Shown in pieces: positions 5,406-62,744 of a stretch of 64,000 bases of DNA (position 1 is the stretch's first letter; each line of letters starts with the position of its first letter). The stretch comes from Octopus sinensis (taxonomy: Eukaryota). Below the pieces are notes generated by a model that saw nothing but the letters and a program-made list of their open reading frames with translations, searched no databases and was not told where the DNA came from. The DNA is taken from positions 49,104,001 to 49,168,000 of the forward strand of contig NC_042998.1 in the NCBI RefSeq assembly GCF_006345805.1, read 5' to 3'. The position numbers and the translations under genes were made by a program.

Positions 5406-5439
<34 letters not shown>

Positions 5440-7045: not shown

Positions 7046-7078
<33 letters not shown>

Positions 7079-14380: not shown

Positions 14381-14436
<56 letters not shown>

Positions 14437-19072: not shown

Positions 19073-19103
<31 letters not shown>

Positions 19104-22100: not shown

Positions 22101-22610
22101 TGAGTGTAGTGGGTGCTTTTTACGTGCCACCATATATATATATTTAAAATCTAGAGGGTTACCTTCAGTTGTGGAGTATGAAATAGTTAGTGAAGACTGG
22201 AGTTGTTTGCTATTACATTTACTCCACAGTTTACAGTCATAACACTTGTGAAAAAATATGACTAGATGACTAAGGGTTTCTTATTATATAATCAATATAA
22301 CATAATCAATAAGACAGTATCATTGCTCTCTTCCGTGTTTTCCAACTTATTTTATGATCTGTCACCCAAACGTTATGGAAACAGCTGTAAACCATGCAGT
22401 AAATGTCTTATACTAACTATTTTATATGTGAACAGTGCACCCTCCATAGATCAAATAAAAGATTAGGTCCAAAATTCCAAAACAGCTGAGGTCAACACAA
22501 GACACCTGAAGAAGGCTGGAGCATACAACAGCCGAAATGTAGTGAAAGCAGTCAAGATGAGGACACCAGACTAATATAAACAATATACATTGTACTCTAT
22601 TTTTCACTTG

Positions 22611-22648
<38 letters not shown>

Positions 22649-34600: not shown

Positions 34601-35180
34601 GTGACTTGAATAATAATAATAATTATCATTATAATAACATCGAAAAAATACCTTAGGAATGAGAACCCAGGTTCGAAATTTCCCCAAGACACCTGATGAA
34701 GGCTGGAGGGAATATCAGCCCAAACGTTGTGTTAACAACAAAGATGAGGACAACTATCCGTCAAATGTAAATGATATATATAATTCCTTATCTCTTAAAT
34801 ATAGATCAATAAATTAAGTACCAGTTGCATACTGGGGTCAATCTAGTCGACTGGCATCCTTCCCAAAAATTTTGGGCTTTGTGCCAAGAGTAGAAAAGAA
34901 TATTTTTCATTCACTGATAAAAAAGAAAGTCTAAGGGAGATTTACTCACCGAATCATAAACTTCAGTTCTGAATGCATCACACGTAGTTTCCACAGTCTG
35001 CTACCATAACGCATTACAATATTCCGTACTGTATCTTCCAGCTACAATATATATATGTATCATCATTATAATCATTTAATGTCTATGTTCCCTGCTGGCT
35101 TGGGCTGCACTACTGGCACACACAGAAATATGCTCATGCACAGATATACACATATCTGTGTACATGCACACACACGTGCG

Positions 35181-35212
<32 letters not shown>

Positions 35213-47200: not shown

Positions 47201-48322
47201 AAATGTTTATTTCCTCTTAGACTTATTAAGTCTTTGAGTTCTTTATTTTAAGTGGCCAGACAGCTCATTTGAATTTGTCCACCTGCTGGAATATAAACTA
47301 AACACAAATGACATTTTTATACCTATGCCTCACCAAGGACCCACTAGTGAACTGAATCTAGGGTTATACTTTGGATTTAGTACTTGCATTATCTACAGTA
47401 TCCAGCTAACACTTGAAGCCTTCAATGTTGTTTTATTTCACTCTGAGTTCTACGTGATCATAAGACCCCAGGACTTATTCTTTGTAAACCTAGTACTCAT
47501 TATATCGGTCTCTTTTACCAAACTGCTAAGTTACAGGGAAATAAAGGCACCAGCATCAGTTGTCAAGCAATGTTGGGGAGACAAGCACAGACACACATAT
47601 ATATATTATGGTGGGCTTCTTTCAGTTTCCATCTACCAAATCCACTCACAAGACTTTGGTCAGCCCAAGGCTATAATAGAAGACACTTGCCCAAGGTGCC
47701 ATACAGGGAGACTGAACCTGGAACCATATGGTTGGTAAGCAAGCTACTTACCACACAGCCACTCCTGTTTTATTTGTTTCACTCATTTGACTAGTGCCAT
47801 GTTGGAGCACTGAAGGATTTTTAAAGCCAAGCACTTATTCTGTTGTTCTCATTTGCCAAACTGCTAAGTTATGGGGACGTAAACACACCAACAACAGGGG
47901 GGACAAATACAGACACACACACATATACATATATATATATTCTTTTATTCTTTTACTTGTTTCAGTCATTTCACTGCAGCCATGCAGGAGCACTGCCTTT
48001 AGTCAAGCAAATCAACCATAGAGCTTATTTTTTGTAAGTCTAGTACTTATTCTATCGGTCTCTTTTGCCAAACTGCCAAGTTACAGGGACATAAACATAC
48101 CAGCATCAGTTGTCAAGCAATGTTGGGGGGACAAACACAGACACACAAACATATACACACACATACATACGACAGGCTTCTTCCAGTTTCCGTCTACCAA
48201 ATCCACTCACAAGGCTCTGGTCAGCCTTGCCAAAGGTGCCTCGCAGTGGAATTGAACCCAGGACCATGTGGTTGGTAAGCAAATTACTTACCATACAGCC
48301 ACTCCTGCGCATATATATACAC

Positions 48323-48355
<33 letters not shown>

Positions 48356-51300
48356 TATATATATACACACACACACACACACATATATATATATGCATAC
48401 ATGAAAACAGCTTTCTTTGTCAAAGTATAGATGAAGGGAAGCATGTATGCACATGTGTGTGCGCACACGCACATATATACATGCATGCATACATACATAC
48501 ACACACACATACATACTACATACATACATACATGAAAACAGCTTTCTTTGTCATAGTATAGATGAGGGGAAGCATGTATGCACATGTGTGTGCACATACA
48601 CATCAAAGCCTTTCTGGCTGTGTTTGTCCCTCCGCAACTGGTGTGAGCAGAAAGAGACCAATAGAATAATGACTGGACTCCAAAAAGAGAGACCGGAGTC
48701 AAATTCTCCAACTAAAAACCCTTCAAGATAGAGCCCAGCATGGCTGCAGTCCAGTGACTGAAACAAGTATAAAGAATAGTCTTCCTTGTTCTTTGTAAAT
48801 CAATTCAGTTATAAACAACATGTAACAATATTATTGGGTTGGTGCATATTATTGCAGCCTTTTTTTCAACAAATTTTATTCAACAAAAACAATAACAGCA
48901 TGTAACAAAAACATCTTCAGATGGTTATTCTGGAGCATATTCACCATCTACTTCAATTGCTGCTTCCCATTTGCTTGGCAGATGGTCAAACCGTCATTTA
49001 AAGACGTTTTTGTTAAATATTGTTATTGTTTTTGTTAAATAAAAATGTGCTAAAAAAAAAAAGCCACAATAGTTAATCACCAACCCAATACTATGAAACT
49101 TATGACATGAAACTAAATAAAAGATGGCTTGTGAATATGCAGGAACTTGAACATGGCTACAAGAACCTGGTTAAAGTGAAAGAATGCTTAAGAGATGAGT
49201 TCATCAGCAGAGCATCAACGTCCCATCACCACCACCACCCACTGACATATACAACAAAGATAAAAGAACATGTAAGAAATAACATCTGAAAGGAAGGTGC
49301 ATGCTGGGAAAGAAAGTGGTACAAAGTGGGTAATAGAGGCTACAAAACTGGGCAAAGTCAAAACAGAATAAGGATGTACAGGGGATAGATATCATCTAGG
49401 AAGGTGAGACAGCACTGTATCATGTTGAAAGGTGATAGGTTATGAATAAACTATAAATATATATTCAATAATAAATTGATACATGTGTTTGTGTACGTAT
49501 GACAATATCAAGTATTAGATAGCTCTCCAAATCTAGATATTTGCAACAATTCTATGACTAAATACCAATTTCTTTATTACCCACAAGGGGCTAAACACAG
49601 AGGGGACAAACAAAGACAGACATAGGTATTAAGTCGATTACATCGACCCCAGTGCATAACTGGTACTTAATTTATCCACCCCGAAAGGATGAAAGGCAAA
49701 GCCGACCTCGGCGGAATTTGAACTCACAATGTAACGGCAGACGAAATACCACTAAGCATTTCGCCCGGCGTGCTAACGTTTCTGCCAGCTCGCCGCCTAT
49801 GACTAAATACCAACTATTAAACCAAGAGGTAAGAATGATGCACACATTTTTGCATTAGGTATCTTTTCTATTATAAGCACAAGGCCTAAAATGTTGGGGG
49901 AAATGGGTTAGTCAATCACACCAAGCCCAGTACTCAACTAGTACTTAATGGACCCCAAAAGGATGAAAGTGAAAGTTGACCTCGGTAGTATTTGAACTCA
50001 GAATGTAAAGCCAGAAGAAATGCTGCTAAGCATTTTGTCCAGCATGATTCCACCAACTCAAGAATACACAGTAAATACAGAGAACACTTAGTAACCCAAG
50101 CCATGAGGGAATGGGGGGAGGGGGGCAATGACAATAGAAAGACCAGAAACAATGGCTGAGAGGTGGGAATGGGGTAAGAGTATAATTGAGAAGTACTCCA
50201 TAACTTAGGGTGTGTACATTTGTGATAGAGAGTGAAGATGGGAAGAATGACATTGGACAGACCAGAATGGGTAGATAAAAGAACCAAGACCATGATGCAA
50301 AGGCAGGGTTATTGGAGGAGGAGTCGGGGGGGGGGGGTGACTGACAGTGGCAGAAGTGGACAAAGGTTAACATGAGTGATGAGACAGAGGTAAAGGTAAA
50401 TGACAGGTGGTAACAGAAGTGGCCAAGCAGAGAGGGAAAGGAAGAGAGGGATGGTATATTGGGTAGGGAGTTGAGGGTGGTCTGATGCTGTGTCATATAC
50501 ACAGGCCTAGTGAAGGGCAAAGGAGCTGGAGTGATGAGGATGATGTCAACACAAGTGGTGGAGTGATGGAGAGCTATGAGTGATAAAGAGACAAACAAAA
50601 AGAGGGAACAATATGGGGATGAATGATGCAGAGTAAGGAGGGTAGCTAATATTAGGCTTTGCCAGGTACAAAATATTTCAGCCTCTAAATATTACAGTTC
50701 TATATTTAAGAGATGAGGAATTATGTATATTATTTACATTTGACAGATCTTTGTCCTCATCTTGTTTGTTGTTAACACAACGTTTTGGTTGATATACCCT
50801 CCTGCCTTCATCAGGTGTCTTGGGGAAATTTCGAACCTGGGTTCTCATTCCTAAGGTATTTTTTGATGTTGTTGTTATTATTATTATCCAGGCCACTGCC
50901 TGGAATCGAACTCGAAATCTTGGGGTTAGTAGCCCGTACTCTTAACCCCAAGATTCCAAGTTTGATTCCAGACAGTGACCTGAACAACAACTAAGTTGTC
51001 GTCGTCATTATCATCATCATCATCATCATCATTGAAAAATACCTTAGGAATGAGAACCCAGGTTCGAATCTTCCTCAAGACACCTGATGAAGGCTGGAGG
51101 GTATACCAGCCGAAACATTGTGTTAACAACAAACAAGACGAGGACAAATATCTATCAACTGTAAATAATGTACTCTAAATATTACCCTCATACCAAGGTG
51201 TGTTTTGCTGTGGTTGGACAGATCATCACTAATCAGTATGGTCTTTTGTTGTCTGTTCTGCAAAATGCAGCATCTTCAGTTCAGTCTTCACCACTTCATG

Positions 51301-54300
51301 ACAACACTTCCTTAGTCCCCCCACCACCACCAGAATTTTCTATGTCAGCACTCCCTTATGCAGCAGTCATCTCCCAAACATCTCACATGCCCATATTAAT
51401 GCGACCTTCTCTCTTGTATACTATACCTGATTCTTCTTCACCTAGATATTTCTCTCAGATTATTCATACACTGTTCATATCATCAGTAACATTTCAGATT
51501 TCAAAAAATACTATCATAAAATAATTGCCACACACATTTTATCCAGAAATCCAGAAAATTATATATACAAACCATTTTACCTGTTTCACCTGACCCCAAA
51601 CTCTACACCAACTACCTCTAGAAAAACAAAAGCTGTCATACAATAAGCCCACTTTGCCAGTCTTTTCCGTGGCCACAGGAGCTTTAAGACCATCTTTGAA
51701 TATTCTAAAGAGAAATACAAAAGCAATAGCCTATATGGTGATGTGTAGGGAAGCTATGCACCTCCTCGTGCCAACCATTGACAAACAATGTCTATAGTAA
51801 TACTTGAGTAGATTGAACCAGGGTTCACTAGATCTATAACATTTGATCAGGTACCACCAGAACATAAATCTTCTCAAGAAGGAAGTTATTCAACAGCCAC
51901 AACAGTGAATGAAAAATGAATGAAAACAGGTGAAGGTTAGGACAATGTTTAAGACAGAGACGACAGTTAGTGAGAAATGGAAACAGAGTTTCATGCCAAA
52001 GATGTTAGAGGTTGAAGGACAGAAGGTGTGAGGTTAGCAGGGCTACGTCAAGAAGAACAAGGTTCAGAGAAAGCAGGGATTAAATATAAAGGTGAAAAAA
52101 ACTGGGGGTTTTTTTAACGTAAATTTTAATGCAAATATGATGCCTTAGGAGAAACGTTGGCTACACATACACCTGATACTGTGAAGGAGATGAAAGATTA
52201 AATATGAAAGAATCATTTAAAAACAAAATGCAATGACCTGCATTTAAATTAGAACAGGAGGAGAAAACAGTAGTTAAATGTAGAAATGAAATACTAATTA
52301 CAAAGTTCAAACTATAGATATAGAAATAATATCACTGTAAATACATTAGATTACATTACTATATCGATACGTGCACGTATGAGTAAATATATTAATACAT
52401 TATGAAACAAACAATTATAATGTAAACCACAACAATAACTATTCAGAAGTTATATGATTATGCACACAGAGCAGGATGCCAAAATGCATTTTTAAATAAT
52501 ACCTAAGTTGCAGTAAATCTTTTTGAAAAACATGATGATAGAATGAGCTTCTCCATTGCTATTGCTACAACTCCTCAAAGGCAAGGAACAGAGTTCTGAG
52601 TAGGTAGCAGTGATGGATGGGGTGGATGGTGTCATCAAAAGATTTGGCAGAGAAATGGATAGATCAGGAGTTCGCAACAACTTTTTATTTATGGACCCCT
52701 TTGATTACTATTTTTATGCTGGTGGACCCCTTGGCCATTCAATGTTTAAAAACTAATTTTAATAGAAACTTCTTTCAAAATTCCTATTTTACGTTTCACA
52801 AATTAACTTGTGTAAGTAGTAATATGTAAACTGTTAGAGAAAGGAACCTAACTGATTCTTGTAATAAATACACCTAAAGTAAAAATTTTCAGGGGCCCTT
52901 AAAATACTAATGTAGATCCCCAATTTACTATTTTGTTATGTGGACCCAAACCCCTCTTATATGAACCCTCAAGGGCCATATGGACCCTGGTTGAGAACCA
53001 CTGGGATAGATAAAGTGGTTGAAGTAATCAGAGTGTGATAGGGTACTTAAGCTTAAGACTAGTCTTAGAAAACATCACAGCATTTATTTCTGCATACACT
53101 CCACAGGCTGGCTTGGCATATGAACAGAAAGACCTTTTCTAACACACACACACACGGATACGTTTTGTGGATAATGTGGGGATGATAAAATGATAGTATC
53201 ATAATGCGAGATGTAGTTGATGTTCTCAAATTAAATTACTTCATTTATACAATTGTTCAACTTCAGCAAAAAATAGAACTTCCCCATTCGATGACACTTT
53301 ACATCTGAAATAAGATATCTCAGAAAGATGCATATGTGTCTGCATATACATGCTTTATCGTCATCCTCATTCTACATCTATTTTTCTATGCTGACATATG
53401 TAGTATGGATGTCATAGCAACTGGCCATTAATAGCGTAATAATGTTTAGGCAGAAATATTTGCTAACACATCAAAATACAATTAGGCAACAATATATCTG
53501 ATTTGATGAATCACCACAAGAAAAAAAAAATGAAAGAGGGGACTTAGAAAGTATATCGCACATTTTGATTATTCAAAGTGGGATCAACTTTTATTCAATC
53601 CCTATTTTACTGTCTACAATGAGGTCATTTAATAACTGTGACAGATGTTTAAAGCTCTGATGTATTTGTAGTAACGTAAATGAAATACATAAAGATAAAT
53701 GTTAACGTAAGGTTATTATTTTAAAGCAAGTTTAAGATTAACAACAGAATATTTACTGAAGGAAAGATTCAATGTGAAAAGCAGAGTCAAACATTATAAT
53801 TTATTTTGATGGCAACTTTAGCTTTCATATGATGGTTTATTTAACTAGACTGGTTGAACAAGTCTTTAAGTGAACATATAATGGATCTTTTCGGTTTGAA
53901 CGGCAGTTTTTAACATAATTTCAAGGTAATTAAAAAATTTTAAACTTTGTATACTGGTAGAATGTGATTATAAAACATCTTTTTCCCTTGGCTTTATTGA
54001 GAAAATTCTATAGTTTGTAAGATATTTGTTGTTGTTTTTCTTTAATTTCTGCAATTTCAACCAATCAATGACATCCATTGAGGTAAAAAAAACATTCTGT
54101 GCCGTATGAATATGTCCCTTGTTTACATTAGTGAAGAAAAAAAGATACCCTTCCCCTAACCCTAAAACAGATTGAAATGCAATAGATCGATACTAGGGTC
54201 ATAATTATGGGTGACAATTTCATATGACACCACTAGAAAAAACTGCCATTCAAACCGAAAAGATCCCATATAATTAATATCTTCCTCATGTTTATCAGAG

Positions 54301-57300
54301 TTCCTAAGTTTTATGTGAAGCTTCTTTTTGTATCTTAACAACACTGACCAAAAACCCAAACAGATAAGAAATACAAAACTCATCATTAAACTAATTCAAC
54401 AAATCAAACCAGAAAATAGAATTCAACCACCATATCAGAAAATAAATCATTCAAGTTCATAACATTTGTCACCACTTTATTACTTAAAACACAACTATTC
54501 TTACAAAACATGGTGATGTGAATGCACAGAAGTGAGAGAAGAGACATCATTTGTGCTATAAAAGAAAATATATTTTTAAGAAACTTTGTTGTAGAGAAAT
54601 TACTGCGTGCTATTAAACAGTCTGAACTTGAAAGTGTTCAGAAGAAAAAATTTAACTTGGCTGATCTCTCCAGTATAATTCAATTAGAATTGAAATAACT
54701 AACATTTCATAGGCATTTTATAGACATATGATTCTTTTTTAGTAACAGAGGGCTAAGTATTTTTTTTTTTCTTTTTAAACCTAATGTAGCATTGAATAGA
54801 AAAGAAGACTGTAGCCATGTGTGAAATTAAGAACCAGTTTGTTAAAGACCATACAGGATGCAGAGTTAGGTAAGAGAAATATATTTTGAAAACCAGGCAT
54901 GCGTAAGAGAATATGATGAAGAATTACCCCGTGCACAAGTTAAAGGCTTATCCTTTCTGAGAAATAAAATAACAAAAATGTCATCTCTCTCGCTCTCTCT
55001 CTTTCAGTATCAGAATTATTCTTAAAGTAAAACTTTTCCACAAAATATCTCTACTGAAAGACATATTAACTTACACTTTTAATTCATTTTTTTAAAATTT
55101 CATCTCCCAATGCTGCTTCGCAAATTGTCAACCAAAAATTTACAATAAAAACAGGTATAGTTATTGAATTAATCTAAATATACCCCTGGTACTTAATTTA
55201 TCAACTACAGAGGAATGGAAAGTGAAGTTGATTTCAGTAGAATTTGAACTAAGAATGTAAGAGACATAACAAAACACCGAACCTGGCATTCCACTGTTTC
55301 TGTCACTGTTGTCCTATTGGATTTCTTAATATGACTAACATTTCTTTAGGACTTCCACAACAGCAATTAATGTATAAAAGTATGAAGTGAAAATAATTTT
55401 TCTTATCCTTTTACCCTTATCTCCTTTAGATCTCTCTCCCTTTTGTATCAATATACAACTAGACAACAAAGAAATTTATAGTTTCATTGAGGACAGCCTT
55501 TCATGTGAGTAAATGCACTGGTCTGCTCTTTCAAATATATCAAAGCTAAAGCAATAGGATAGATGAGGGAGGCAGAGGAAATCACTTACCCAGGATGAAT
55601 CAACCTGAAAGTCAATAGGATCAAACAAAAAAAGAAAACAAATAAAATAAAATACATACATAAATCATAATTAATGATGAAAATGTTAATATGGTTGAAA
55701 ATATATTGGCTTCGTATTTTAATTTTGAGTCGTAAGTTTGGAACTGGGAACCGAAGACATCTAAAAAAGCAATGGGCTTTGTTTTATATTAGAAGTTTCA
55801 TTAAATATTTCCATCATAATGACTTTTCTTTTTTTTTTAACCAACTAAAACATGATAATATTAAAACAAAATAATATGATAGGAGAATTAAATAATGATC
55901 CTAAATTAGATAAAATTATAATAAGAAATATTGTGTCTATGTTATACTGATAATGGCTAGAGCACTTTTTGCGCGACCTGGAATGTAGATCTCCTTTGTT
56001 CCACTATTATCAGCAGTACAGATTTAATATATGAGATACATGAGTTAGCAAAGAGGACTAATGACAGCTTGTATCAAGTTTGTTAAAGAGAAATCAAAGA
56101 ACTTATGAACAAAAATAAATAGTAGTAACACTACTACTAAAGGAATAAACATGCAGGAACAATATTGAGATATTCAGTAGCCTTGCTTCAATAGAGGTAA
56201 AAGAAAAAGAACTGATGAAGCCTATAGCTGAACCAGAAAGATGACAACAGTAACAGCAGCGTACAATGAATACATCCACAAAACAGTATTTAAATACAGA
56301 CTGACAGAGGATTACTCCATATAATAGACACTTGGCAGCTACAGGACTAGAAATAACATTAGAAAATGTGAAGAGAAGCTTAAATTAAATCAAATTAAAT
56401 GCTAAGTTTATTTGACAATCATATAGAAAAATCAATATTTGTAGCAGCAAACATTTTCTAAATGCATGAAAAAATTAATAAATATACATCTCTTTATACA
56501 ACTAAATGTTTCACATCTATTTGGGAAGAGAAATGGAAATGACGTGTTCAACATCATTAGCTAATGATATAAATGAAGCATTTCTCATTGGGAACCAAAA
56601 ATACAAGCTTCCCAAAATTTAGTGAAACAACAGTAACCATCATAATAATAATAATAAAAAATAATATTTCTATCTTCAAACCAAAACCACAAATTTTGTG
56701 GAAAAATATAGCCAATTGTGAATGGCACTTATAGTAACCATCTGGAAATATGAAAAGAAAAATTCAACTCCAGTAAGATGTGAAGGAAAAGTAACAAAAT
56801 ATTGGTCTCAAATTTTTGCACAGGGGAGAGGGTAAGTTGTTTACACTGACCCCAGTGCCCAACCAGTACTTACTTTATTGACCCCCAAAAGGATGAAAAG
56901 CAAAGCTGACCATGGCAGAATTTGAACTCAGAACATTAAGACAGATGAAATGCTTGCTAAGCATTTTGCCCAGATATTGCAGAATATTGCAAGGCATTTA
57001 GTCAGGCACTATACCATTCCTGCTGCTCAGCTGCTACAGCGACATTAATATTATCATGAAGGTAATTAAGATATTTATTGTGAATTTGTGAAAAACGTAC
57101 CTGTTGGGGTGAGATGTCGGCAAAAGAAACTTGAATTCAACAACACAGAGACTATTCAAGAGTTGATCATGACGCAAACACACAAGTTCATAAGCAGTAT
57201 AGGCTCTTCGGACATACACCTTAAATATTGGAATGGTAAAAAAAAGAAAATAAAAGAAAAATACATAAATACCATGATTAGATAAAGTGGTTATACTGCT

Positions 57301-57901
57301 CAATCAAACAGAAGTAAATAGTTAAGAGAAATGACTGTAAATGTAAATCAACATGAGATTTAATGAGAGATATGATCATTTACACCCTCCACACACATAT
57401 ATTTGTTTCCTTTGGACTGCAGTTATGCCAAGGCACCACCTCCTGGGACAGACAGGGGGACCCTTTTTATATCAAAAAGTTGCATTAAATTAAATGTAAT
57501 CCAAAAAGGATGGATATAAACATGTAAACAAAATGCACATTAAATGACATCGATGATAGGAATAATGAACTATACTGCTAATATTTAGCTAATTTCATAA
57601 TTACTGCAAAAATATTCAAACTGAGTGTGAAAATACCCAAACTTGTGATAATTAAAAGCTTTATTTTCTGAAAAATGATTCAAATAGTCTAAATTTCAAA
57701 TTTCATTTCTAAAACTGTTACAAGATAAATGAATCCACAAATGCCTTTGTAAAGAAAATTTGTCTTCTGTGACAATATTACAGAGCAGACTTACCTCTAA
57801 AGCTGCTGTTCTCACCAATGAGTTTGAATGGAAAAAGAATTCTTGCAAAACATCATAAATAGCAGTCTCAGAATTAATGAGTTTCTAGGAAGAAGAAAAA
57901 G

Positions 57902-57951
<50 letters not shown>

Positions 57952-60900
57952 TTTCTTTGTTTACTTTTTCCCCCACTTTTTCTCTATCACATGACTTTGT
58001 AAATGAACGATCTGGTGTGTTTATTTTAATGGCCAACAAATGCATACAGTGCATTTCAGACAAACAATTGAAAGATGATAATGAAAATGGTGGTGGTGGT
58101 GACGGTAAAAAGTAATGTTGACCTCACTGAGATATTAACTCAGAATGTAAAGAGCCAAAACAAATACCACAAGGTATTTTGCTCATAGTTTCGGACATTA
58201 ATAATTATTTTTTATGTCCTTTAGAGAAAAATATGTTGGTCAAAGAAACTGAAATGTTCTTAGAATAAATATATATTTTGCCAAAACAGTTCATTGTGGT
58301 GCAAAAATATCTTGGCGAATACACACTTTCACACAAACTCTTCTACCTAAAAGATAACTTCCAATGCATTTTTGAATTTTGGAATCCTGAAAAACAGAAG
58401 AAAGTTGTTGCTTATATAAGCAACAAGGAAAAGAAATTTCTAGCAATTGAAGGTATATGAGAAAGTGAGGATGAGAAGTAAGAGAAAAAAACAGTAAGAA
58501 ATAACTAGAAAGAAATCTCAGCGGTGATTCCTGATGAGCCATGGGCTTTCCCTGTCTTCATATCCTTAATTGCCTTATCTACAAGGGTACTGTCAATTCG
58601 GGTAGCTGGTCCCTCAATTGGGTCAACATTTGGTAGGCTCTCCTCCTCCTATTCATTCTCCACATTCAGCAGTCTTTCATAATAGCATCTCCAAGCCTCT
58701 TTCTTTGCAGAATCATTAACTGCAAGTGCACCATCATCCATGCAGACACATTTCTCTCCTATGACATCACAATTTTCTCTCACACACTGTCTTGTGATCT
58801 GAAATACTTCAGTTCTTTGGTCCTCACGTCGCTGAACATTAGCAAACTTCTTTTCTGCTTTTCCCTTGGCTATATATACCAGTCTCCTAGCCTCTCTTCT
58901 GGTTATCTGATACAGTTCCCTGCTACCCCCACTCTTCCAGGTTTTCCAGGCCTTTTTCTTTGCTCTAATGGCCCTGTCTACAGTATTATTCCACCACCAC
59001 ATTACCCTAGGTCTGGACGGGACTCTGCCCCAGCCACAAATTTGGTCTGTGGCACTCAGTAAGCTGTCATGCAAGAATTTCCATTTGCCCTCTATGTCAC
59101 AAGTCTGTAGCTTCTCCTCCCGCTCATCAAATTTCTCAATGAGGATGTCCCTAAATGTGTATGATTAGATACTGTCTGAAAAGAATTTAGTCTTAAGCAA
59201 ATATATATATAAAATGTGTATGATTAAACATATAGTTGAAGATGCAATATTTTAACTAAAGCTGCATAATCAATTTTCGGAAAACTGATGGTTTTAATCT
59301 AGAAAAGAGATCAAAAAAAATTCTCAATGTTTAAATAAATGAAAGATAAAAAAAAAAAACACAGTTACCTGAAGGTTCTCAGGACAGAAATCGTGACCAG
59401 ATATATTAATAGCAGACAGAAAGATTGATTCCATTTGATTATGTCGCAGTTCAAAGGCAGGCTGATGTGCAGCAATCAGAATCTTAAAAAGAAATGGCAA
59501 ATATTGATTAACTGATAAATCAAAAAAACCTGGCAGCTAAATGGTACAGTCTCAGCTATTTTGGTTATTATAGAATAACTGCAACTCCTAATCCCTAAGT
59601 TCTGCATTTTGACAACAACTACGACATATAATTATTTCATTTTCTCACTTAACTAACTGCAAGAACCTTCCCACTTGATTTCATGCAAGCACTTACTTTC
59701 CAAATGATCCAAAACATTGTGACGAGAAATGGCTTAACCCTTTCGATACCAACCCTGCTGAAACTGCCTCTGGCTCTCTAGTACAAATGTCTTGTTTTCA
59801 TAAGTTTTGAATTAAAATCCTCCACCAAAACCTTAGTCACAATTTATGTTCCTAACACCAGCTTAATGGTAACTAAGTTATTTTATTAAATTCTTTGTTA
59901 TATTTAAAATTAATTGAAAGAAACACAGAGTATCTCAAAATAAATACGGTAACAAAAGGGTTAACCCTTTAGCATTTAAGCCAGCCATATCCAGCTAAAA
60001 TACTCTACCTGTTTTATCTTCAGATCAACCAGATCTGACCTCTCACATATACTCTACAATGTCATTTTAAAAATAAACAGTCGCATCATTGAAATCTCAA
60101 GGCTATATGACAGTGCATGATCACTTCAAAACAAAGCAAATAAATATTACGTTTGACAATGTAATCTGAAGGCTAAAGGGTTAAACCAGCCAAATTCAGC
60201 TAAAATACTCTACCACTTTTGTGTTCAAACCAACTAGATGATCTGACCTATCATACCTAACCTACAATGTCATTCTAAAAGTAAACAAATACATCATTGA
60301 AATCTCAAAACTACAAGATAGTGCATGATTAATTCAAAATAATGTGAATAAACACGCATTATATTTGACAGAGTAATACAAATGCTAAAGGGTTTAATGG
60401 CCCAAGATCCTGCACCACCCACTTTTAACTCCACTAATAAAAAAGAAATGATAAAATTGATAACTTACCTGTCGTGCTCGGAGAGCTACTTTGGCATTTT
60501 CAGTTTTGTTCAGAGTGGTCAACTCACTGAGAATCTGTGCTAGGTCATCAGTGAGACCAGATTCATTTCCACACAAGTATTCCTGCAAGAAACATACTTT
60601 ATCAGTTAATTTTCTGTTTTTAAAAAAAATTCCATTTAATATTTAATATATATTTCTTTTTACAGGTACATTGCATGTTATTCAGCAACTGCTGAAGATC
60701 ACAGTAAGCCATAAGAATATCAATTTTCAAAAGCAGACCTTAATTCTAGAGTACTAGAGTATTAACATATAATGCATTAACACTCTCTTTAGTTCAGTAT
60801 ATCATCATCATCATCGTTTAATGTCCGCTTTCCATGCTAGCATGGGTTGGACGATTTGACTGAGGGCTGGCGAATCAGATGGCTGCACCTGAATCCAACC

Positions 60901-62371
60901 TTGATCTGGCAGAGTTTCTACAGCTGGATGCCCTTCCTAACGCCAAACACTCCGAGAGTGCTTTTACATGCCACTGGCACTAGTCAGGCGGTACTGGCAA
61001 CAACCTCGCTCAAATCTTTTTACACATGCCACCGGCACAGGTGCCAGTAACAATCACGCTTGAATGGTGCCTTTTATGTGCCACTGGCACAGAAGCCAGT
61101 TAGCCGCTCTGGCAACGATAAAGAAAAAATAAATCAAGTTTTACAGAATCATTTACCACCAAAGCTTTGATAGTTTTAAAAAGTGTAGTGTTTAGTGACT
61201 TGTATCCACTTCACCCAACATTTGGTAACAATATATTTCAATTCTTTAAACATTTCGACACATCTCCTTACAAACTCATAACTCAAGTAGAATAAGCTAT
61301 TTACTCTCTTTCAGCTCACAGATTTCCAAGATATCTACTAATTAACAACTCTTGAGGATAAATATTCCCTAATATTTATCGAATATCAAAATTATATATA
61401 ATTTTTAGCAAAACAGAATAAGCACAGTAAAGAATATTTGTGTCTGCATGGGCATCAAATCAATGGCATAACACATCTGATTCTTGGTAGTCCTGTAGAA
61501 CATTTCACAAAGATTTTCTAACAATATTACAGAATTGGTTTGCATTAAGCTATCCTCACTCTTGGTTCAAATGACAGAACTCCAATCAGTTTTTGCGAAC
61601 CAAATTTCATTCACAAAGCTTCATGCGTCTCAAGGCTATGTAGACATTTACTCAAGGCACAGCATGGTGGGATTGAACCTGAAGCCATGTAGCTGTGGAA
61701 ACTACTTAACCACACAATTATGCCTATATCCATGAACTTGGACATCATCATTTAATGTCCGCTTTCCATTCTGGACAACTACCAAATCCACTCACAAGAC
61801 TTTGGTCAGTTTGGGGTTTTAGTAGAGTATACTTGCCCAAGCTGACAGACAATGAGATTGGTCATATAATTTTTTAATAGAATATGAAATGTTTAGCAAT
61901 ATGTAATACAAAAAAAAAAAGCAAAATAAGTGGAAAATAAAATAAGAAAACACCACAAACAAATAGCCAAAATCATACGGCAGACACCCATAAAATTATT
62001 AACCATCTTACTAACAATAACACAGAGCACCTTTTCAAACTCCACCTGTCTAACACCCGTGGACATGTTTACAAAGTCAGAAAACAGCACAGCTCCCATG
62101 ACTTTCGGAAACATTTTTCACACTAAGAGTTGCTAAAGTATGGAACAAACTACCGGCATCAGTTGTTAGTTGTCGGAGCACTTCATCCTTCAAAACTTCC
62201 ATGCTTCCTGAGATTCGCCAACACTACACCTGATTTTCTCCCCTCTATACACACGCAAGCATATATCTGACTCATACACTGTTCACTTTCCAGACATTTG
62301 TACATCACTGCATATGCTTTATACACACTTTTAACAAGTTGTGGTGCACCTGAGCACTGTATACAATAATT

Positions 62372-62409
<38 letters not shown>

Positions 62410-62635
62410 TTCATTGGCTTCCAGTGGTAAGTAAATGCTTCATACATTGAAACTTCACAAATGAAATGAAAGAGTGCAAGCATGCCTATGTATAACACAA
62501 CTTTACTTACTATGAGTAATATGACCAGTTCATTCTTTTCAGCAATCGCAGAATGAGAAAAAATTGTGGCTGTAACTGCACCCATGTCATCCTTGTGTCT
62601 TTCTCGAACTTGGGCAACACATTTATCATAGTGAC
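2867..62635 (-). CDS. ACC: Acetyl-CoA carboxylase, 3' portion (33 exons; central domain + carboxyltransferase domain); 5' exons lie outside the window
   Basis: Spliced translation contains ACC motifs [116 protein letters not shown] and [11 protein letters not shown]. All introns are GT-AG with matching phases. Summed exon length 3956 nt = 2 + 1318 codons including the stop. Confidence 0.98.
3932..4515 (+). mobile_element. 5'-truncated LINE (CR1/L2-like), ORF2 C-terminus with a frameshift
   Basis: [13 protein letters not shown]...[18 protein letters not shown] / [10 protein letters not shown]...GPQLFNILP...FKTKLDLFL...RAAASNSL; ends in (TA)n. Exact clade not determinable by eye. Confidence 0.85.
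4692..4825 (-). CDS. ACC: ACC exon ([14 protein letters not shown]...QQIR)
   Basis: cag/gtaatt boundaries; 134 nt; phase 0 to 2. Confidence 0.95.
6571..6741 (-). CDS. ACC: ACC exon ([18 protein letters not shown]...STVN)
   Basis: tag/gtaagc; 171 nt; FFYWRLRR and MLRRWFVE motifs. Confidence 0.96.
6888..7300 (+). mobile_element. tRNA-derived SINE with an internal (TA/TG)n microsatellite, full-length copy
   Basis: Head ggctgtgtggtaagtagc...ggttcagtcccactgcgtggcaccttgggcaagtgtctt; tail ...gactgaaacaagtaaaagag. Other copies or parts at about 3570, 5240, 9063, 18110, 18775, 23640, 26470, 39150 and 47390-48770. Confidence 0.85.
7933..8200 (-). CDS. ACC: ACC exon ([19 protein letters not shown]...KEVIN)
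   Basis: cag/gtaagt; 268 nt; phase 2 to 0. Confidence 0.97.
9988..10165 (-). CDS. ACC: ACC exon ([15 protein letters not shown]...ADEYAR)
   Basis: cag/gtatgt; 178 nt; phase 1 to 2. Confidence 0.97.
11802..11937 (-). CDS. ACC: ACC exon ([16 protein letters not shown]...SGGMK)
   Basis: cag/gtaaaa; 136 nt; phase 0 to 1. Confidence 0.97.
12461..12557 (-). CDS. ACC: ACC exon ([14 protein letters not shown]...DSESK)
   Basis: cag/gtacgt; 97 nt; phase 2 to 0. Confidence 0.96.
12911..13340 (-). mobile_element. CR1-like LINE 3' fragment with (ATT)n tail
   Basis: HKIINHLT...[16 protein letters not shown]...FK; near-identical + strand copy at 61979-62409. Confidence 0.85.
15597..15687 (-). CDS. ACC: ACC exon ([13 protein letters not shown]...GRAR)
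   Basis: tag/gtaaga; 91 nt; phase 1 to 2; not in the ORF track. Confidence 0.95.
16975..17430 (+). mobile_element. RTE-tail non-autonomous element (catcatcgtttaacgtccgctttccatgctagc...) with internal tandem units
   Basis: (CAT)n followed by the family core gctggatgcccttcctaacgccaaccactcc. Copies at about 8640, 14935, 21960, 22670, 35215, 39450 and 60805. The element's own sense is probably opposite to the reading shown. Confidence 0.75.
17727..17847 (-). CDS. ACC: ACC exon ([17 protein letters not shown]...KKDT)
   Basis: tag/gtaagt; 121 nt; phase 0 to 1. Confidence 0.95.
20793..20936 (-). CDS. ACC: ACC exon ([15 protein letters not shown]...WLSYMPK)
   Basis: tag/gtaaat; 144 nt. Confidence 0.97.
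21223..21431. mobile_element. mariner-derived MITE (irritans-like TIR)
   Basis: TIRs cacgagagtgtgctgaaaagttcctggcttt / aaacccaagaacttttcagtacccccttgtg; same family as 29158-29379. Confidence 0.8.
23427..23537 (-). CDS. ACC: ACC exon ([18 protein letters not shown]...GALNK)
   Basis: cag/gtaagt; 111 nt. Confidence 0.97.
24130..24790 (-). repeat. Head-to-tail trimer of a tRNA-derived SINE
   Basis: Three consecutive units each starting at ...ttta(c/t)tacccacaaggggctaaac: about 24130-24318 (truncated), 24316-24550 and 24558-24790. Confidence 0.85.
25364..25929 (+). mobile_element. Internally deleted mariner transposon
   Basis: 30-bp TIRs (ttgggctgtccggaaagttcgtgccgattt; 3 mismatches); TA on both flanks; residual transposase C-terminus [29 protein letters not shown] (YSPDLAPSD-type motif). 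Confidence 0.93.
26064..26161 (-). CDS. ACC: ACC exon ([20 protein letters not shown]...TISL)
   Basis: cag/gtaagt; 98 nt; phase 1 to 0. Confidence 0.97.
28141..28370 (+). mobile_element. RTE LINE ORF C-terminal fragment
   Basis: Translates with a frameshift as [34 protein letters not shown]. Confidence 0.8.
28890..29010 (-). CDS. ACC: ACC exon ([12 protein letters not shown]...ITDII)
   Basis: tag/gtaaaa; 121 nt; phase 0 to 1. Confidence 0.96.
29158..29379 (+). mobile_element. mariner-derived MITE (irritans-like TIR)
   Basis: TIR cacgagggggtgctgaaaagttcctggcttt; internal [18 protein letters not shown] resembles the mariner transposase C-terminus. Confidence 0.82.
29582..29719 (-). CDS. ACC: ACC exon (GASELARK...[12 protein letters not shown]...DPNK)
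   Basis: tag/gtaagt; 138 nt. Confidence 0.97.
30125..30500 (+). mobile_element. Non-autonomous Helitron/Helentron-like element
   Basis: Starts taaactagcagtatcgcccggcgttgctcggg (subterminal hairpin); has a (CA)-rich segment; ends gccatttatatatagagat. This layout resembles HINE/DINE-type elements. Confidence 0.6.
30547..30678 (-). CDS. ACC: ACC exon (VGMVAWKM...[12 protein letters not shown])
   Basis: tag/gtatgt; 132 nt. Confidence 0.97.
31134..31280 (-). CDS. ACC: ACC exon (ALMKLWQEY...NRLHGQNE)
   Basis: cag/gtaagt; 147 nt. Confidence 0.94.
31972..32127 (-). CDS. ACC: ACC exon ([12 protein letters not shown]...YDFPEMFRQ)
   Basis: tag/gtataa; 156 nt; [20 protein letters not shown] motif. 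Confidence 0.96.
32287..32660 (-). mobile_element. Degenerate RTE LINE fragment
   Basis: [15 protein letters not shown]...AL...[12 protein letters not shown] with in-frame stops. Confidence 0.7.
33190..33400 (-). mobile_element. RTE LINE C-terminal fragment (second family)
   Basis: [33 protein letters not shown]. Confidence 0.7.
33552..33663 (-). CDS. ACC: ACC exon ([23 protein letters not shown]...KTGL)
   Basis: cag/gtaggt; 112 nt; phase 2 to 0. Confidence 0.94.
33762..34067. mobile_element. hAT-type MITE
   Basis: Ends cagtgtttcccaac / gttgagaatcacta; 8-bp TSD gtctaaat / gtctgaat (7 of 8 match). Confidence 0.85.
34457..34805 (+). mobile_element. Composite element: tRNA-like head + (AAT)n + Penelope-like tail with a minimal hammerhead motif, preceded by an inverted partial copy; nested in a SINE
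   Basis: Box A TGGTGTAGTGG at 34541-34551; box B GTTCAATTCC at 34586-34595; CTGATGA-A-GGCTG..CAGCC-cAAA-CGTT at 34693-34728; 9-bp TSD TCAATAAAT at 34448-34456 and 34806-34814. Confidence 0.75.
34950..35041 (-). CDS. ACC: ACC exon ([21 protein letters not shown]...MIR)
   Basis: tag/gtgagt; 92 nt; phase 0 to 2. Confidence 0.95.
35637..36013. mobile_element. Tc1-like MITE
   Basis: TIRs cactaccgtcagaaattaattagcac / gtgctaattaatttctgacgcaagtg; TA on both flanks. Confidence 0.85.
36313..36384 (-). CDS. ACC: ACC exon ([15 protein letters not shown]...PGK)
   Basis: cag/gtgaga; 72 nt. Confidence 0.95.
36665..36754 (-). CDS. ACC: ACC exon ([30 protein letters not shown])
   Basis: tag/gtaaga; 90 nt. 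Confidence 0.96.
37544..37787. mobile_element. hAT-type MITE with a degraded right end
   Basis: cagtggctctcaac ... gttgagaacc; no matching TSD visible. Confidence 0.6.
38147..38224 (-). CDS. ACC: ACC exon ([26 protein letters not shown])
   Basis: cag/gtttgt; 78 nt. Confidence 0.95.
38771..38908 (-). CDS. ACC: ACC exon ([19 protein letters not shown]...GKAK)
   Basis: tag/gtgagt; 138 nt. Confidence 0.97.
39322..39466. repeat. 62/63-bp tandem repeat (about 2.3 units) at the junction of a SINE and a nested RTE-tail element
   Basis: Units start at 39322, 39384 and 39447 (gtgtcggtggcacataaaa...). Confidence 0.9.
40754..40795 (-). CDS. ACC: ACC exon ([14 protein letters not shown])
   Basis: cag/gtaagt; 42 nt; matches REFPKFFTFRAR as I recall it from vertebrate ACC. 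Confidence 0.93.
41573..41629 (-). CDS. ACC: ACC exon ([19 protein letters not shown])
   Basis: cag/gtaaac; 57 nt; GIRRITF motif. Confidence 0.93.
41775..42376 (-). mobile_element. tRNA-head SINE joined to an RTE-derived 3' tail
   Basis: Head gtggaggcacatggcctagtggttagagc...ggttcaaatc; tail encodes [30 protein letters not shown], typical of an RTE C-terminus. Confidence 0.75.
43156..43269 (-). CDS. ACC: ACC exon ([17 protein letters not shown]...FCKEK)
   Basis: tag/gttggt; 114 nt; EPI.I.NV motif. The donor is weak but is the one that fits the phase. Confidence 0.88.
43416..43521 (-). CDS. ACC: ACC exon ((E)[13 protein letters not shown]...VSIQ)
   Basis: tag/gttagt; 106 nt; phase 2 to 0; FDE motif. 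Confidence 0.85.
43601..43821. mobile_element. piggyBac-like MITE
   Basis: TTAA-ccctttcgttac ... gtaatgaaaggg-TTAA. Same family at 44206-44426 and 59738-59960; related families at about 11480, 20590 and 63818. Confidence 0.85.
45976..46110 (-). CDS. ACC: ACC exon (LMVMRFDGG...[16 protein letters not shown])
   Basis: cag/gtaagt; 135 nt; phase 2 to 2; RMG...F..F motif. Confidence 0.88.
48250..48600. repeat. Compound (TA/CA)n microsatellite with a duplicated unit of about 70 bp
   Basis: catgaaaacagctttctttgtca(a/t)agtatagatga(a/g)gg..agcatgtatgcacatgtgtgtgc occurs at about 48399 and 48531. Confidence 0.85.
48834..49088 (-). mobile_element. mariner-derived MITE (cecropia/Hsmar1-like TIR)
   Basis: TA-ttgggttggtg ... 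caccaacccaa-TA; internal minus-strand [21 protein letters not shown] resembles a mariner C-terminus. Confidence 0.8.
50683..51185. mobile_element. Head-to-head inverted dimer of the tRNA-head/hammerhead composite element
   Basis: Minus-strand copy about 50692-50945 and plus-strand copy about 50943-51172; flanked by the direct repeat CTCTAAATATTAC at 50683-50695 and 51173-51185. Confidence 0.8.
51079..51124 (+). ncRNA. Minimal type-I hammerhead ribozyme motif (core intact, stem III palindrome mutated)
   Basis: GACAC-CTGATGA-A-GGCTGG(agggtata)CCAGCC-GAAA-CATT-GTGTT; stem I GACAC/GTGTT; 6-bp stem II. Confidence 0.55.
52665..53003. mobile_element. hAT-type MITE
   Basis: caggagttcgcaac ... gttgagaaccactg; perfect 8-bp TSD GGATAGAT on both sides. 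Confidence 0.9.
53879..54270. mobile_element. MITE with TIRs of about 30 bp (superfamily uncertain, TA-rich flanks)
   Basis: ggatcttttcggtttgaacggcagtttt / aaaactgccattcaaaccgaaaagatcc. Confidence 0.8.
55590..55604 (-). CDS. ACC: Candidate 15-nt ACC micro-exon (adds about LIHPG), probably alternative
   Basis: Minus strand reads long U-rich tract ...gactttcag|GTTGATTCATCCTGG|gtaagt; phase 2 to 2; no stop. No transcript evidence is available. Confidence 0.6.
57101..57219 (-). CDS. ACC: ACC exon ([12 protein letters not shown]...LPTSHPNR)
   Basis: aag/gtacgt; 119 nt; phase 0 to 2. Confidence 0.96.
57795..57884 (-). CDS. ACC: ACC exon ([13 protein letters not shown]...AALE)
   Basis: tag/gtaagt; 90 nt. 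Confidence 0.95.
58530..59155 (-). mobile_element. RTE LINE internal fragment (endonuclease-RT linker)
   Basis: [22 protein letters not shown]...[17 protein letters not shown]. Confidence 0.85.
59369..59482 (-). CDS. ACC: ACC exon ([24 protein letters not shown]...PENLQ)
   Basis: aag/gtaact; 114 nt. Confidence 0.95.
59734..60396. mobile_element. Three abutting piggyBac-like MITEs sharing TTAA sites
   Basis: TTAA at 59734-37, 59961-64 and 60181-84; units 59738-59960, 59965-60180 and a 5'-degraded relative 60185-60393; ccctt/aaggg termini. Confidence 0.8.
60469..60582 (-). CDS. ACC: ACC exon (EYLCGNE...[10 protein letters not shown])
   Basis: cag/gtaagt; 114 nt. Confidence 0.96.
61979..62409 (+). 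mobile_element. CR1-like LINE 3' fragment with (ATT)n tail
   Basis: Same family as 12911-13340 (ggcagacacccataaaatt...gcacctgagcactgtatacaataatttc(att)n). Confidence 0.85.
62511..62635 (-). CDS. ACC: ACC exon ((G)[11 protein letters not shown]...VILLI), the most 5' exon in the window
   Basis: tag/gtaagt; 125 nt; phase 1 to 0; GHYDKCV motif. Confidence 0.95.
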
Positions 62636-62744
62636 CTAGAAAGTGACCAAAGACATTATTAGGCAATTAGTTCATACAATTAATTACAGAATTGGAAATG
62701 AAAGACTTCACATTTTAGGGAATAGCATGCATCCATCCATCCAT

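What the first reader, a model, noticed from the sequence alone, without database searches (positions are those of the whole stretch)
55590..55604. 15-nt micro-exon at the position of the alternatively spliced 8-aa exon of mammalian ACC1
Seen: consensus donor G|GTAAGT, acceptor TTTCAG with a long U-rich tract, and frame preserved (HPNR-LIHPG-LMV versus HPNR-LMV). Established: mammalian ACC1 has an optional 24-nt exon directly after SHPNR that affects nearby phosphorylation. Inference: a conserved or convergent micro-exon switch, possibly tissue-specific, that standard annotation would miss.
Basis: partly seen in the sequence, partly recalled or inferred. Interest (0 to 1): 0.7.

Follow-up and report, generated by a model that had tools for sequence, protein, structure and literature searches.

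The report
Octopus ACC 15-nt cassette micro-exon
The 15-base micro-exon in the octopus acetyl-CoA carboxylase gene is real and conserved, adding five amino acids at the start of the enzyme's regulatory loop, but public gene annotations of four octopod species already contain it, so it is not a missed feature.

Summary
GTTGATTCATCCTGG lies at window 55604..55590 on the minus strand. It is flanked by tttcag| and |gtaagt and sits in the ~11-kb phase-2 intron that follows the ACC exon ending ...PTSHPNR. Sequence alone is only suggestive: about 0.05 equally strong in-frame candidates are expected per intron.

Comparison settles it. In Argonauta hians the same intron has one unique conserved island. 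Its exon differs at 3 of 15 bases, all synonymous third positions, and still encodes LIHPG; 19 of the 20 bases upstream are identical, while the neighbouring constitutive exons are only ~76% identical.

The exon is already annotated. O. sinensis X1 and X3, one O. vulgaris model, O. bimaculoides X1 and X3 (LTHPG) and Argonauta include it. The X2 models and one O. vulgaris model skip it. "Standard annotation would miss it" is therefore wrong.

The site does match the vertebrate 8-aa cassette (GNIPTLNR, Acc1 exon 28), at the N-terminal base of the central-domain regulatory loop. The peptides are unrelated, however. Octopods also lack the nearby regulatory serines, and mussels, scallops and ticks carry other, unrelated cassettes at the same site. 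Independent origin at a recurrent splicing hot spot is most likely. Tissue specificity and true skipping were not tested at read level.

The parts
55590..55604 (-). 15-nt cassette micro-exon GTTGATTCATCCTGG. With the split codons it encodes (R)-L-I-H-P-(G).
   Evidence: Sequence. Present in annotated proteins P0283, P0287, P0281 and P0280 (LIHPG) and P0282, P0286 and P0289 (LTHPG). The Argonauta orthologue is GTTGATCCACCCCGG, with 3 synonymous changes.
55605..55655 (-). 3' splice region of the micro-exon: a long U-rich tract followed by TTTGATCCTATTGACTTTCAG. The last 21 nt are almost invariant between Octopus and Argonauta. TTGAC is a possible branch-point-like motif, which is inference only.
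   Evidence: 19/20 and 26/30 upstream bases are identical to Argonauta. The BLAST island spans window 55645..55568 at 86% identity; alignment.
55584..55589 (-). Consensus 5' splice site GTAAGT, preceded by the exonic G.
   Evidence: GTAAGT is conserved in Argonauta.
57101..57219 (-). Upstream constitutive exon [39 protein letters not shown](R). It ends in phase 2 (AG|).
   Evidence: It aligns to human ACC1 1152-1191. It is 76.5% identical in DNA to Argonauta with 1 aa change.
45976..46110 (-). Downstream constitutive exon (R/G)[44 protein letters not shown](E). It carries the rest of the regulatory loop and the next beta-strand.
   Evidence: 76.3% DNA identity to Argonauta.
2870..62636 (-). 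C-terminal ~57% (aa ~1000-2322, about 33 exons) of the Octopus sinensis/vulgaris-type acetyl-CoA carboxylase gene.
   Evidence: tblastn of P0283 against the window. The window peptide has GGIAKDD/LIHPG as in O. sinensis and O. vulgaris, not GSITKDD/LTHPG as in O. bimaculoides.

Best explanation
This is a genuine, evolutionarily conserved U2-type cassette micro-exon of the octopod acetyl-CoA carboxylase gene, and it is already in public annotation. When included, it inserts Leu-Ile-His-Pro-Gly directly after the invariant ...LPTSHPNR motif. That places it at the N-terminal base of the disordered loop, about 30 residues long, between two beta-strands of the CDC1 sub-domain of the non-catalytic central domain. 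The loop grows from 29 to 34 residues and gains a Pro-Gly turn.

Shown here: the exon, its splice sites, its conservation, its presence or absence in annotated isoforms, and its position in the loop.

Inferred: the two isoforms differ in how this loop packs at the CDC1/CDC2 hinge, which would tune ACC conformational freedom, activity or filament behaviour. This would not act through a Ser1200-type phosphosite, because octopods lack those serines.

The cassette most likely arose within cephalopods, independently of the vertebrate 24-nt exon. Both occupy an ancient phase-2 intron that has repeatedly acquired alternative cassettes in other lineages.
For: Sequence and frame. Splice-site strength and rarity.

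Annotation: searches give XP_029649533.1 and XP_029649551.1 (O. sinensis X1, X3), CAI9718472.1 (O. vulgaris), XP_014784494.1 and XP_014784510.1 (O. bimaculoides, LTHPG) and GAB1607442.1 (Argonauta hians) with the insert. XP_029649542.1, CAI9718471.1 and XP_014784503.1 lack it and differ by exactly 5 aa.

Conservation: in the Argonauta locus L002 the micro-exon lies 1359 nt after the upstream exon, against 1496 nt in the window. It is the only unique conserved island in the intron. The exon is 12/15 identical with all 3 changes synonymous, and the upstream 20 nt are 19/20 identical. The flanking coding exons are only ~76% identical.

Structure: in the AlphaFold2 model of the X1 segment, strand 50-57 (CVVEFKFL) and HPNR 62-65 are followed by residues 66-95 at pLDDT below 50, then strand 100-107 (RMGIVAAF). 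The insert is residues 66-70. The model matches human ACC1 filament structures and the yeast central domain. The segment is Pfam ACC_central with E = 1.7e-131. PMC4833862 places human Ser1201 and Ser1216 and yeast Ser1157 in the regulatory loop between beta2 and beta3 of CDC1, which wedges between CDC1 and CDC2.

Independent origin: the cassette peptides are unrelated. No cassette at this site appears in the listed isoform sets of Haliotis, Biomphalaria, Liolophura and oysters. Different cassettes occur in Mytilus, Pecten and Rhipicephalus.
Against: No RNA reads or transcript contigs from cephalopods were found in the searchable collections. Evidence that both isoforms exist rests on gene models. 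The first 6-7 nt of the micro-exon (GTTGAT) nearly equal the first bases of the downstream exon (ATTGAT in Octopus, GTTGAT in Argonauta). Short read overhangs could therefore create false 'skipping' junctions, and the exon might be constitutive. The O. vulgaris models may not be independent of the O. sinensis annotation. The functional mechanism is inference only, and the AlphaFold loop is low-confidence by nature. Squid, cuttlefish and Nautilus could not be examined, so the age of the exon is bounded only by the Octopus-Argonauta split. The splice-site PWM used was approximate.
Confidence: 0.75

Rival explanations
1. The octopus micro-exon is a true orthologue of the vertebrate ACACA/ACACB 24-nt exon. 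On this view the intron after SHPNR already carried an alternatively spliced cassette in the bilaterian ancestor, and the cassette sequence and length have since diverged beyond recognition.
For: The insertion point in the protein alignment is identical. The cassette is alternatively spliced as far back as lampreys and in both vertebrate paralogues. Among 23 same-species isoform sets this site is the most recurrent internal cassette position: octopods, mussels, a tick, lamprey ACC1 and snake ACC2. Many genomic ORF fragments run into an intron right after HPNR, so the intron is old.
Against: LIHPG, GNIPTLNR, HFANQCR, DMAALSR and HDSCLFEGYFYPPAR share no sequence similarity, and their lengths differ (15, 24, 21, 21 and 45 nt). 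No cassette appears at this site in the listed isoforms of Haliotis (2 species), Biomphalaria, Liolophura and four oysters. A disordered loop that begins at an exon boundary is an easy place for independent exonisation.
Confidence: 0.15
2. The micro-exon is real but constitutively (or almost always) included. On this view the skipping models (X2) are artefacts of aligning short reads across a 15-nt exon.
For: The micro-exon and the downstream exon start with nearly the same bases (GTTGAT vs ATTGAT; identical GTTGAT in Argonauta), which favours mis-placed short overhangs. The single Argonauta model contains the exon. All changes between Octopus and Argonauta are synonymous.
Against: Skipping isoforms are annotated in O. 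sinensis and O. bimaculoides, two separately annotated RefSeq genomes, and in O. vulgaris. The near-invariant 3' splice region is better conserved than synonymous sites of neighbouring exons, which is typical of regulated rather than constitutive exons (the generalisation is from general knowledge).
Confidence: 0.15
3. It is a chance pseudo-exon: a fortuitous AG...GT pair in a long AT-rich intron that is never spliced in.
For: Sequence statistics alone give only p of about 0.05.
Against: Independent annotations include it in four species. It is the only conserved unique island in the Octopus/Argonauta intron, with synonymous-only substitutions.
Confidence: 0.02

Closest known systems
RefSeq/GenBank isoform models of octopod ACC (O. 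sinensis XP_029649533.1 X1 vs XP_029649542.1 X2; O. bimaculoides XP_014784494.1 vs XP_014784503.1; O. vulgaris CAI9718472.1 vs CAI9718471.1; Argonauta hians GAB1607442.1)
   Same: This is the same feature. The 5-aa LIHPG/LTHPG insert after SHPNR is exactly what the window's 15 nt encode.
   Different: Nothing in the sequence differs. The databases only list the isoforms. I found no paper describing the exon, its conservation or its position in the regulatory loop.
Vertebrate ACACA exon 28 (24 nt, 8 aa GNIPTLNR) and the equivalent ACACB cassette (GSSPTLSR)
   Same: Both are frame-preserving cassettes of micro-exon size, inserted directly after ...SHPNR at the N-terminal base of the central-domain regulatory loop. 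Both inclusion and skipping isoforms are annotated.
   Different: The length is 15 nt rather than 24 nt and the peptide is unrelated. The vertebrate cassette sits two residues before Ser1200/1201 and is reported to influence its phosphorylation (title of Kong et al. 1990, and Barber et al. 2001, as cited in PMC11494077). The octopod loop has no serine there and also lacks the Ser1216/yeast Ser1157 equivalent. The cassette is not phylogenetically continuous between the two groups.
Cassettes at the same site in Mytilus (45 nt HDSCLFEGYFYPPAR, plus an optional 21 nt DMAALSR), Pecten (69 nt) and Rhipicephalus microplus (21 nt HFANQCR)
   Same: They occupy the same insertion point after SHPNR, and same-species isoforms exist with and without them.
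   Different: The sequences are unrelated and the lengths differ. They are known only as gene models, and their exon structure was not checked on DNA here.
SRRM4/eMIC-dependent neural micro-exons of bilaterians
   Same: Similar size (3-27 nt), strong splice sites and highly conserved flanking intron.
   Different: There is no UGC motif in the 50 nt upstream of the 3' splice site (read directly; the motif requirement is from general knowledge). Neural specificity is untested, and ACC is a metabolic gene.

Membership tests
Alternatively spliced cassette micro-exon | Exon of 30 nt or less, a multiple of 3, open in the gene's frame | tested here: met
   15 nt; AG|G TTG ATT CAT CCT GG|A gives R-LIHPG-L.
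Alternatively spliced cassette micro-exon | Canonical AG/GT splice sites of normal strength | tested here: met
   tttcag| and |gtaagt; the approximate PWM scores fall within the range of neighbouring real exons.
Alternatively spliced cassette micro-exon | Both inclusion and skipping mRNAs exist | tested here: inconclusive
   Both forms are annotated as isoforms in three Octopus species. No reads or transcript contigs could be inspected. The GTTGAT/ATTGAT similarity could generate false skipping calls.
Alternatively spliced cassette micro-exon | Conservation of the exon and its flanking intron in related species | tested here: met
   Argonauta hians: exon 12/15 identical with only synonymous changes, 19/20 identical upstream, and the only unique conserved island in the intron. 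O. bimaculoides has LTHPG.
Orthologue of vertebrate ACACA exon 28 | Same intron and insertion point in the protein | tested here: met
   Both follow SHPNR directly. The intron phase was checked on DNA only for Octopus and Argonauta.
Orthologue of vertebrate ACACA exon 28 | Recognisable sequence similarity of the cassette | tested here: not met
   LIHPG versus G[NS][IS]P[TA]L[NS]R.
Orthologue of vertebrate ACACA exon 28 | Presence in intervening lineages | tested here: not met
   No cassette at this site in the listed isoforms of Haliotis, Biomphalaria, Liolophura and oysters; unrelated cassettes in mussels, scallop and tick. Only up to 15 members per cluster were listed, so absence is not proof.
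Orthologue of vertebrate ACACA exon 28 | Lies next to the Ser1200/1201 phosphorylation motif | tested here: not met
   The octopod sequence after the insert is [25 protein letters not shown]. It has no Ser/Thr for about 23 residues, and the conserved PRVxS motif (human Ser1216) is absent.
Eukaryotic multidomain acetyl-CoA carboxylase, central-domain regulatory loop | Host protein is ACC with an ACC_central domain | tested here: met
   Pfam PF08326, E = 1.7e-131. Exon bodies match O. sinensis ACC X1 at up to 100%; lower values occur where tblastn HSPs run into introns. PDB hits are to human ACC1.
Eukaryotic multidomain acetyl-CoA carboxylase, central-domain regulatory loop | Insert lies in the loop between beta2 and beta3 of CDC1 | tested here: met
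   AF2 model: strand 50-57, HPNR 62-65, pLDDT below 50 for residues 66-95, strand 100-107. The fold matches 8xl0, 6g2d and 5i6e. The loop definition comes from PMC4833862. The equivalence of strands was inferred from the alignment of human Ser1201/Ser1216, not from superposition.
SRRM4/eMIC-type neural micro-exon | UGC-containing enhancer close upstream of the 3' splice site | tested here: not met
   No TGC in the 50 nt upstream (sequence).
SRRM4/eMIC-type neural micro-exon | Neural-enriched inclusion | not testable with these tools
   No expression data were available.

The most novel reading that the evidence does not exclude
The phase-2 intron after SHPNR, at the base of the ACC central-domain regulatory loop, may be an ancient bilaterian alternative-splicing site. 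Its cassette would have been repeatedly replaced (vertebrates 24 nt, octopods 15 nt, ticks 21 nt, mussels 45 and 21 nt). This would give animals a splicing-based way to tune the regulatory loop that is independent of phosphorylation. In octopods, which have lost the loop's conserved serine, the micro-exon could be the main remaining switch on this loop.
Probability: 0.2. Interest if true: 0.5.

Novelty: already known. Interest (0 to 1): 0.25.

Why it matters
ACC catalyses the committed step of fatty-acid synthesis. Its central-domain regulatory loop is the allosteric hinge through which phosphorylation controls the enzyme in yeast and mammals. A conserved 5-residue splice insert at the base of that loop, in animals that lack the loop's usual phospho-serines, suggests isoform-level control of lipogenesis in cephalopods.

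Cassettes recur at the same point in vertebrates, mussels, scallops and ticks. That makes this position a natural experiment in convergent, or possibly very old, splice regulation of a core metabolic enzyme.

For the scan itself the lesson is more modest. The exon is real, but it is already in RefSeq and GenBank models, so it is not an annotation gap.

Tried and rejected
1. I searched the protein collection for short and medium cephalopod transcript fragments spanning the junction. None appeared. The only cephalopod hit was a genomic ORF of the downstream exon from another Octopus (P0001, loci L003/L004). No direct RNA evidence was obtained.

2. I searched for full-length relatives with an X-padded query. 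The only cephalopod cluster was Octopus plus Argonauta. No squid, cuttlefish or Nautilus ACC turned up, so conservation beyond Octopoda is untested.

3. Early on I took the 'HPNR-IPHN[RK]' proteins (P0010, P0023, P0113) for molluscs with a possible 15-nt orthologue. The named hits with this motif are arthropods (Daphnia, collembolans, crabs), where it is probably constitutive sequence. Idea dropped.

4. The P0113 locus has a gene range too long for DNA retrieval. I expected the same for the Octopus genes and did not attempt them.

5. I tried to use the morpholino sequence in PMC11494077 to confirm the mouse exon 28 boundary. The printed 15-mer could not be matched to a GT donor by eye, so I abandoned this.

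6. Literature searches for an octopus or invertebrate ACC micro-exon found nothing relevant.

7. A self-BLAST rejected the idea that the exon lies in a repeat or transposon copy.

8. An NMD or poison-exon reading is rejected, because the exon is frame-preserving and has no stop.
Full report
**What is in the sequence.** On the minus strand the window reads ...tttgatcctattgactttcag|GTTGATTCATCCTGG|gtaagtgat at 55604..55590. The exon upstream (57219..57101) encodes [39 protein letters not shown] and ends CAG-phase AG|. The exon downstream (46110..45976) begins |A TTG ATG and encodes [14 protein letters not shown].... Splicing the 15 nt in gives R-LIHPG-LMV and leaving it out gives R-LMV, both in frame. 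A tblastn of the annotated protein shows that the window holds the C-terminal ~57% of an acetyl-CoA carboxylase gene: aa ~1000-2322, about 33 exons, minus strand 62636..2870.

**Is it more than chance?** I built an approximate splice-site weight matrix from consensus frequencies recalled from general knowledge. With it the candidate's sites (3.95 and 4.71 bits) fall within the range of the five neighbouring real exons.
- It is the only in-frame, stop-free candidate of 3-51 nt at or above those scores in the 10,990-nt intron.
- It is the only one of any length on the whole minus strand of the window, with one more on the plus strand.
- Simulated introns (second-order Markov, n = 400) contain 0.05 such candidates on average.

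Sequence alone is suggestive, not conclusive. The exon is not part of a repeat present elsewhere in the window.

**Existing annotation.** A search of the protein collection, using the window's spliced peptide padded to full length, found one cephalopod cluster. Its 12 members divide as follows.
- With HPNR-LIHPG-LMVMRF: O. sinensis isoforms X1 (XP_029649533.1, 2322 aa) and X3, O. vulgaris CAI9718472.1, and Argonauta hians GAB1607442.1.
- With HPNR-LTHPG-LMVMRF: O. bimaculoides X1 (XP_014784494.1) and X3, plus the UniProt-only O. bimaculoides model P0289.
- Without the 5 residues: O. sinensis X2 (XP_029649542.1, 2317 aa), O. vulgaris CAI9718471.1 and O. bimaculoides X2.

The micro-exon is thus already in standard annotation, in fact in 'isoform X1'. 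The window's peptide (GGIAKDD, LIHPG) is of the O. sinensis/O. vulgaris type.

**Conservation at the DNA level.** The Argonauta hians gene locus could be fetched (L002). There the upstream exon, a 15-nt exon GTTGATCCACCCCGG flanked by ccag| and |gtaagt, and the downstream exon lie in the same order. The micro-exon is 1359 nt after the upstream exon, against 1496 nt in the window. A BLAST of the whole Octopus intron against the Argonauta intron finds only three colinear unique matches. These are the two flanking exons (about 77% identity) and an 80-nt island around the micro-exon (86%). Everything else is low-complexity repeat.

Counted directly, the flanking exons are 76.5% and 76.3% identical, with nearly all upstream-exon changes synonymous. 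The micro-exon differs at 3 of 15 positions, all third-codon and synonymous, so LIHPG is kept. The 20 intronic bases upstream are 19/20 identical (TTTGATCCTATTGACTTyCAG), and GTAAGT is conserved. An intronic element better conserved than synonymous sites of neighbouring exons is what one expects of a functional, probably regulated, splice region.

**Position in the protein.** The upstream exon aligns to human ACC1 residues 1152-1191, so the human sequence continues R1191-GNIPTLNR-M-S1201. [quoted passage not shown] It says the exon is skipped in some tissues and that skipping increases phosphorylation and lowers activity (citing Kong 1990 and Barber 2001). Annotated isoforms confirm the site:
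- Lamprey ACC1 occurs as HPNR-GSIPTLNR-MSFP and as HPNR-MSFP.
- Snake and amphibian ACC2 occur as HPNR-(G/E)SSP(T/A)LSR-MS and as HPNR-MS.

The octopus insert is therefore at exactly the position of the vertebrate cassette (alignment).

According to PMC4833862, human Ser1201 and Ser1216 (equivalent to yeast Ser1157) lie in the 'regulatory loop' between strands beta2 and beta3 of sub-domain CDC1. When phosphorylated in yeast, this loop wedges between CDC1 and CDC2 and restricts the enzyme's dynamics, and its N-terminal part contacts CDC2.

An AlphaFold2 model of the octopus X1 segment (mean pLDDT 76, pTM 0.72) shows a strand at 50-57 and HPNR at 62-65. Residues 66-95 then fall below pLDDT 50, and a strand follows at 100-107 (RMGIVAAF). 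The insert is residues 66-70, the first residues of that loop. The model matches human ACC1 filament structures (TM 0.73) and the yeast central domain. The segment is Pfam ACC_central.

**How it probably works.** Shown: inclusion lengthens the loop between HPNR and ERMG from 29 to 34 residues and adds a His-Pro-Gly turn at its base.

Inferred: this changes how the loop lies on the CDC1/CDC2 hinge, and so changes ACC dynamics, activity or oligomerisation.

After the insert the octopod sequence is [25 protein letters not shown], with no Ser/Thr for about 23 residues. The motif that carries the conserved serine in most bilaterians (PRVxS[LVI]x[DE]; human HVAS1216VSD) is replaced by GGIAK-DD in Octopus and NRVAK-EE in Argonauta. 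There is no UGC motif in the 50 nt upstream of the 3' splice site, so it does not look like a classical SRRM4-type neural micro-exon. The motif rule is from general knowledge.

**Homologous or convergent?** Same-species isoform sets show other cassettes at the identical point.
- Mytilus: no insert, +HDSCLFEGYFYPPAR, or that plus DMAALSR.
- Pecten: +23 aa, while a Logan transcript lacks it.
- Rhipicephalus microplus: with or without HFANQCR.

I mapped all internal isoform indels of 23 species sets onto the octopus protein. This site is the most recurrent one (octopods, mussels, tick, lamprey ACC1, snake ACC2). Secondary hot spots lie near aa 1117 and aa 1327. The cassette peptides share no similarity, however. 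No cassette at this site appears among the listed isoforms of Haliotis, Biomphalaria, Liolophura or oysters. The simplest reading is repeated, independent exonisation in an old phase-2 intron that opens onto a disordered loop. An ancestral alternative exon with complete sequence turnover cannot be excluded, and I give it about 0.15-0.2.

**Caveats.**
- No cephalopod reads or transcript contigs were reachable, so the existence of both mRNA forms rests on gene models.
- The micro-exon starts GTTGAT and the next exon starts ATTGAT (GTTGAT in Argonauta). Short read overhangs could be mis-assigned and mimic skipping. A constitutive micro-exon remains possible (about 0.15).
- Squid, cuttlefish and Nautilus were not in the searchable data.
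- No publication describing this exon was found.

**Verdict.** It is at the same site as the vertebrate cassette but is most likely not its orthologue. It is already annotated, so novelty is low. Residual interest lies in the recurrent use of this loop-base intron for alternative cassettes across animals, and in octopods having lost the loop's conserved serine.

Noticed in passing
Proteins P0233, P0354, P0365 (Mytilus edulis); P0198, P0352 (Pecten/pectinid); P0202, P0370 (Rhipicephalus microplus); P0425, P0426 (Lampetra planeri); P0230, P0234 (Pseudonaja ACC2). The site corresponds to the window intron 57100..46111.: Alternative cassettes of unrelated sequence (21-69 nt) are annotated at exactly the same point after SHPNR in mussels, scallops, a tick and both vertebrate ACC paralogues. 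Among 23 isoform sets this is the most recurrent internal indel site.
   Followed up: partly
Window 46110..45976 (-), peptide [19 protein letters not shown]; Argonauta L002 65435..65569: Octopod ACC lacks the regulatory-loop serine conserved in most eukaryotes (human Ser1216 / yeast Ser1157, motif PRVxS). Octopus has GGIAK-DD and Argonauta NRVAK-EE. The motif is also absent in pteriomorph bivalves and ticks.
   Followed up: partly
Window 55604..55598 versus 46110..46104 (-); L002 59035 versus 65435: The micro-exon and the downstream exon begin with almost the same bases (GTTGAT vs ATTGAT in Octopus; GTTGAT in both in Argonauta). Both isoforms therefore read NR-L-(I/M). This could reflect origin by local duplication or a shared splicing or protein constraint. 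It could also cause false skipping calls from short read overhangs.
   Followed up: no
Window introns 59368..57885 (after X1 aa ~1117) and around 41572..40814 (after X1 aa ~1327): Other species carry alternative cassettes at these exon boundaries: Haliotis and Saccostrea at ~1117; lampreys (15 aa DFRKHYDYEVDQRFH), Biomphalaria and Pseudonaja ACC2 at ~1327. The PWM scan found no other strong micro-exon candidate anywhere on the window's minus strand.
   Followed up: partly
Window 58649..59074 (-): A 141-aa ORF lies inside an ACC intron ([20 protein letters not shown]...[20 protein letters not shown]...). By eye it resembles a retroelement fragment, but it has no Pfam hit at E <= 0.01.
   Followed up: partly
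Window ~47900..48720 (both strands): Low-complexity TG/CA- and TATG-rich repeats in the long intron give long spurious ORFs (MCVCVCV...). They cross-match similar repeats in the Argonauta intron, and these are the only other BLAST hits between the two introns.
   Followed up: no
Loci L003/L004 (Logan SRR11869394 and SRR11869384): Genomic contigs from another Octopus-like species carry the downstream exon with GSITKDD...FAQLRE. This is close to O. bimaculoides but not identical. At ~1.25 kb they are too short to reach the micro-exon.
   Followed up: no
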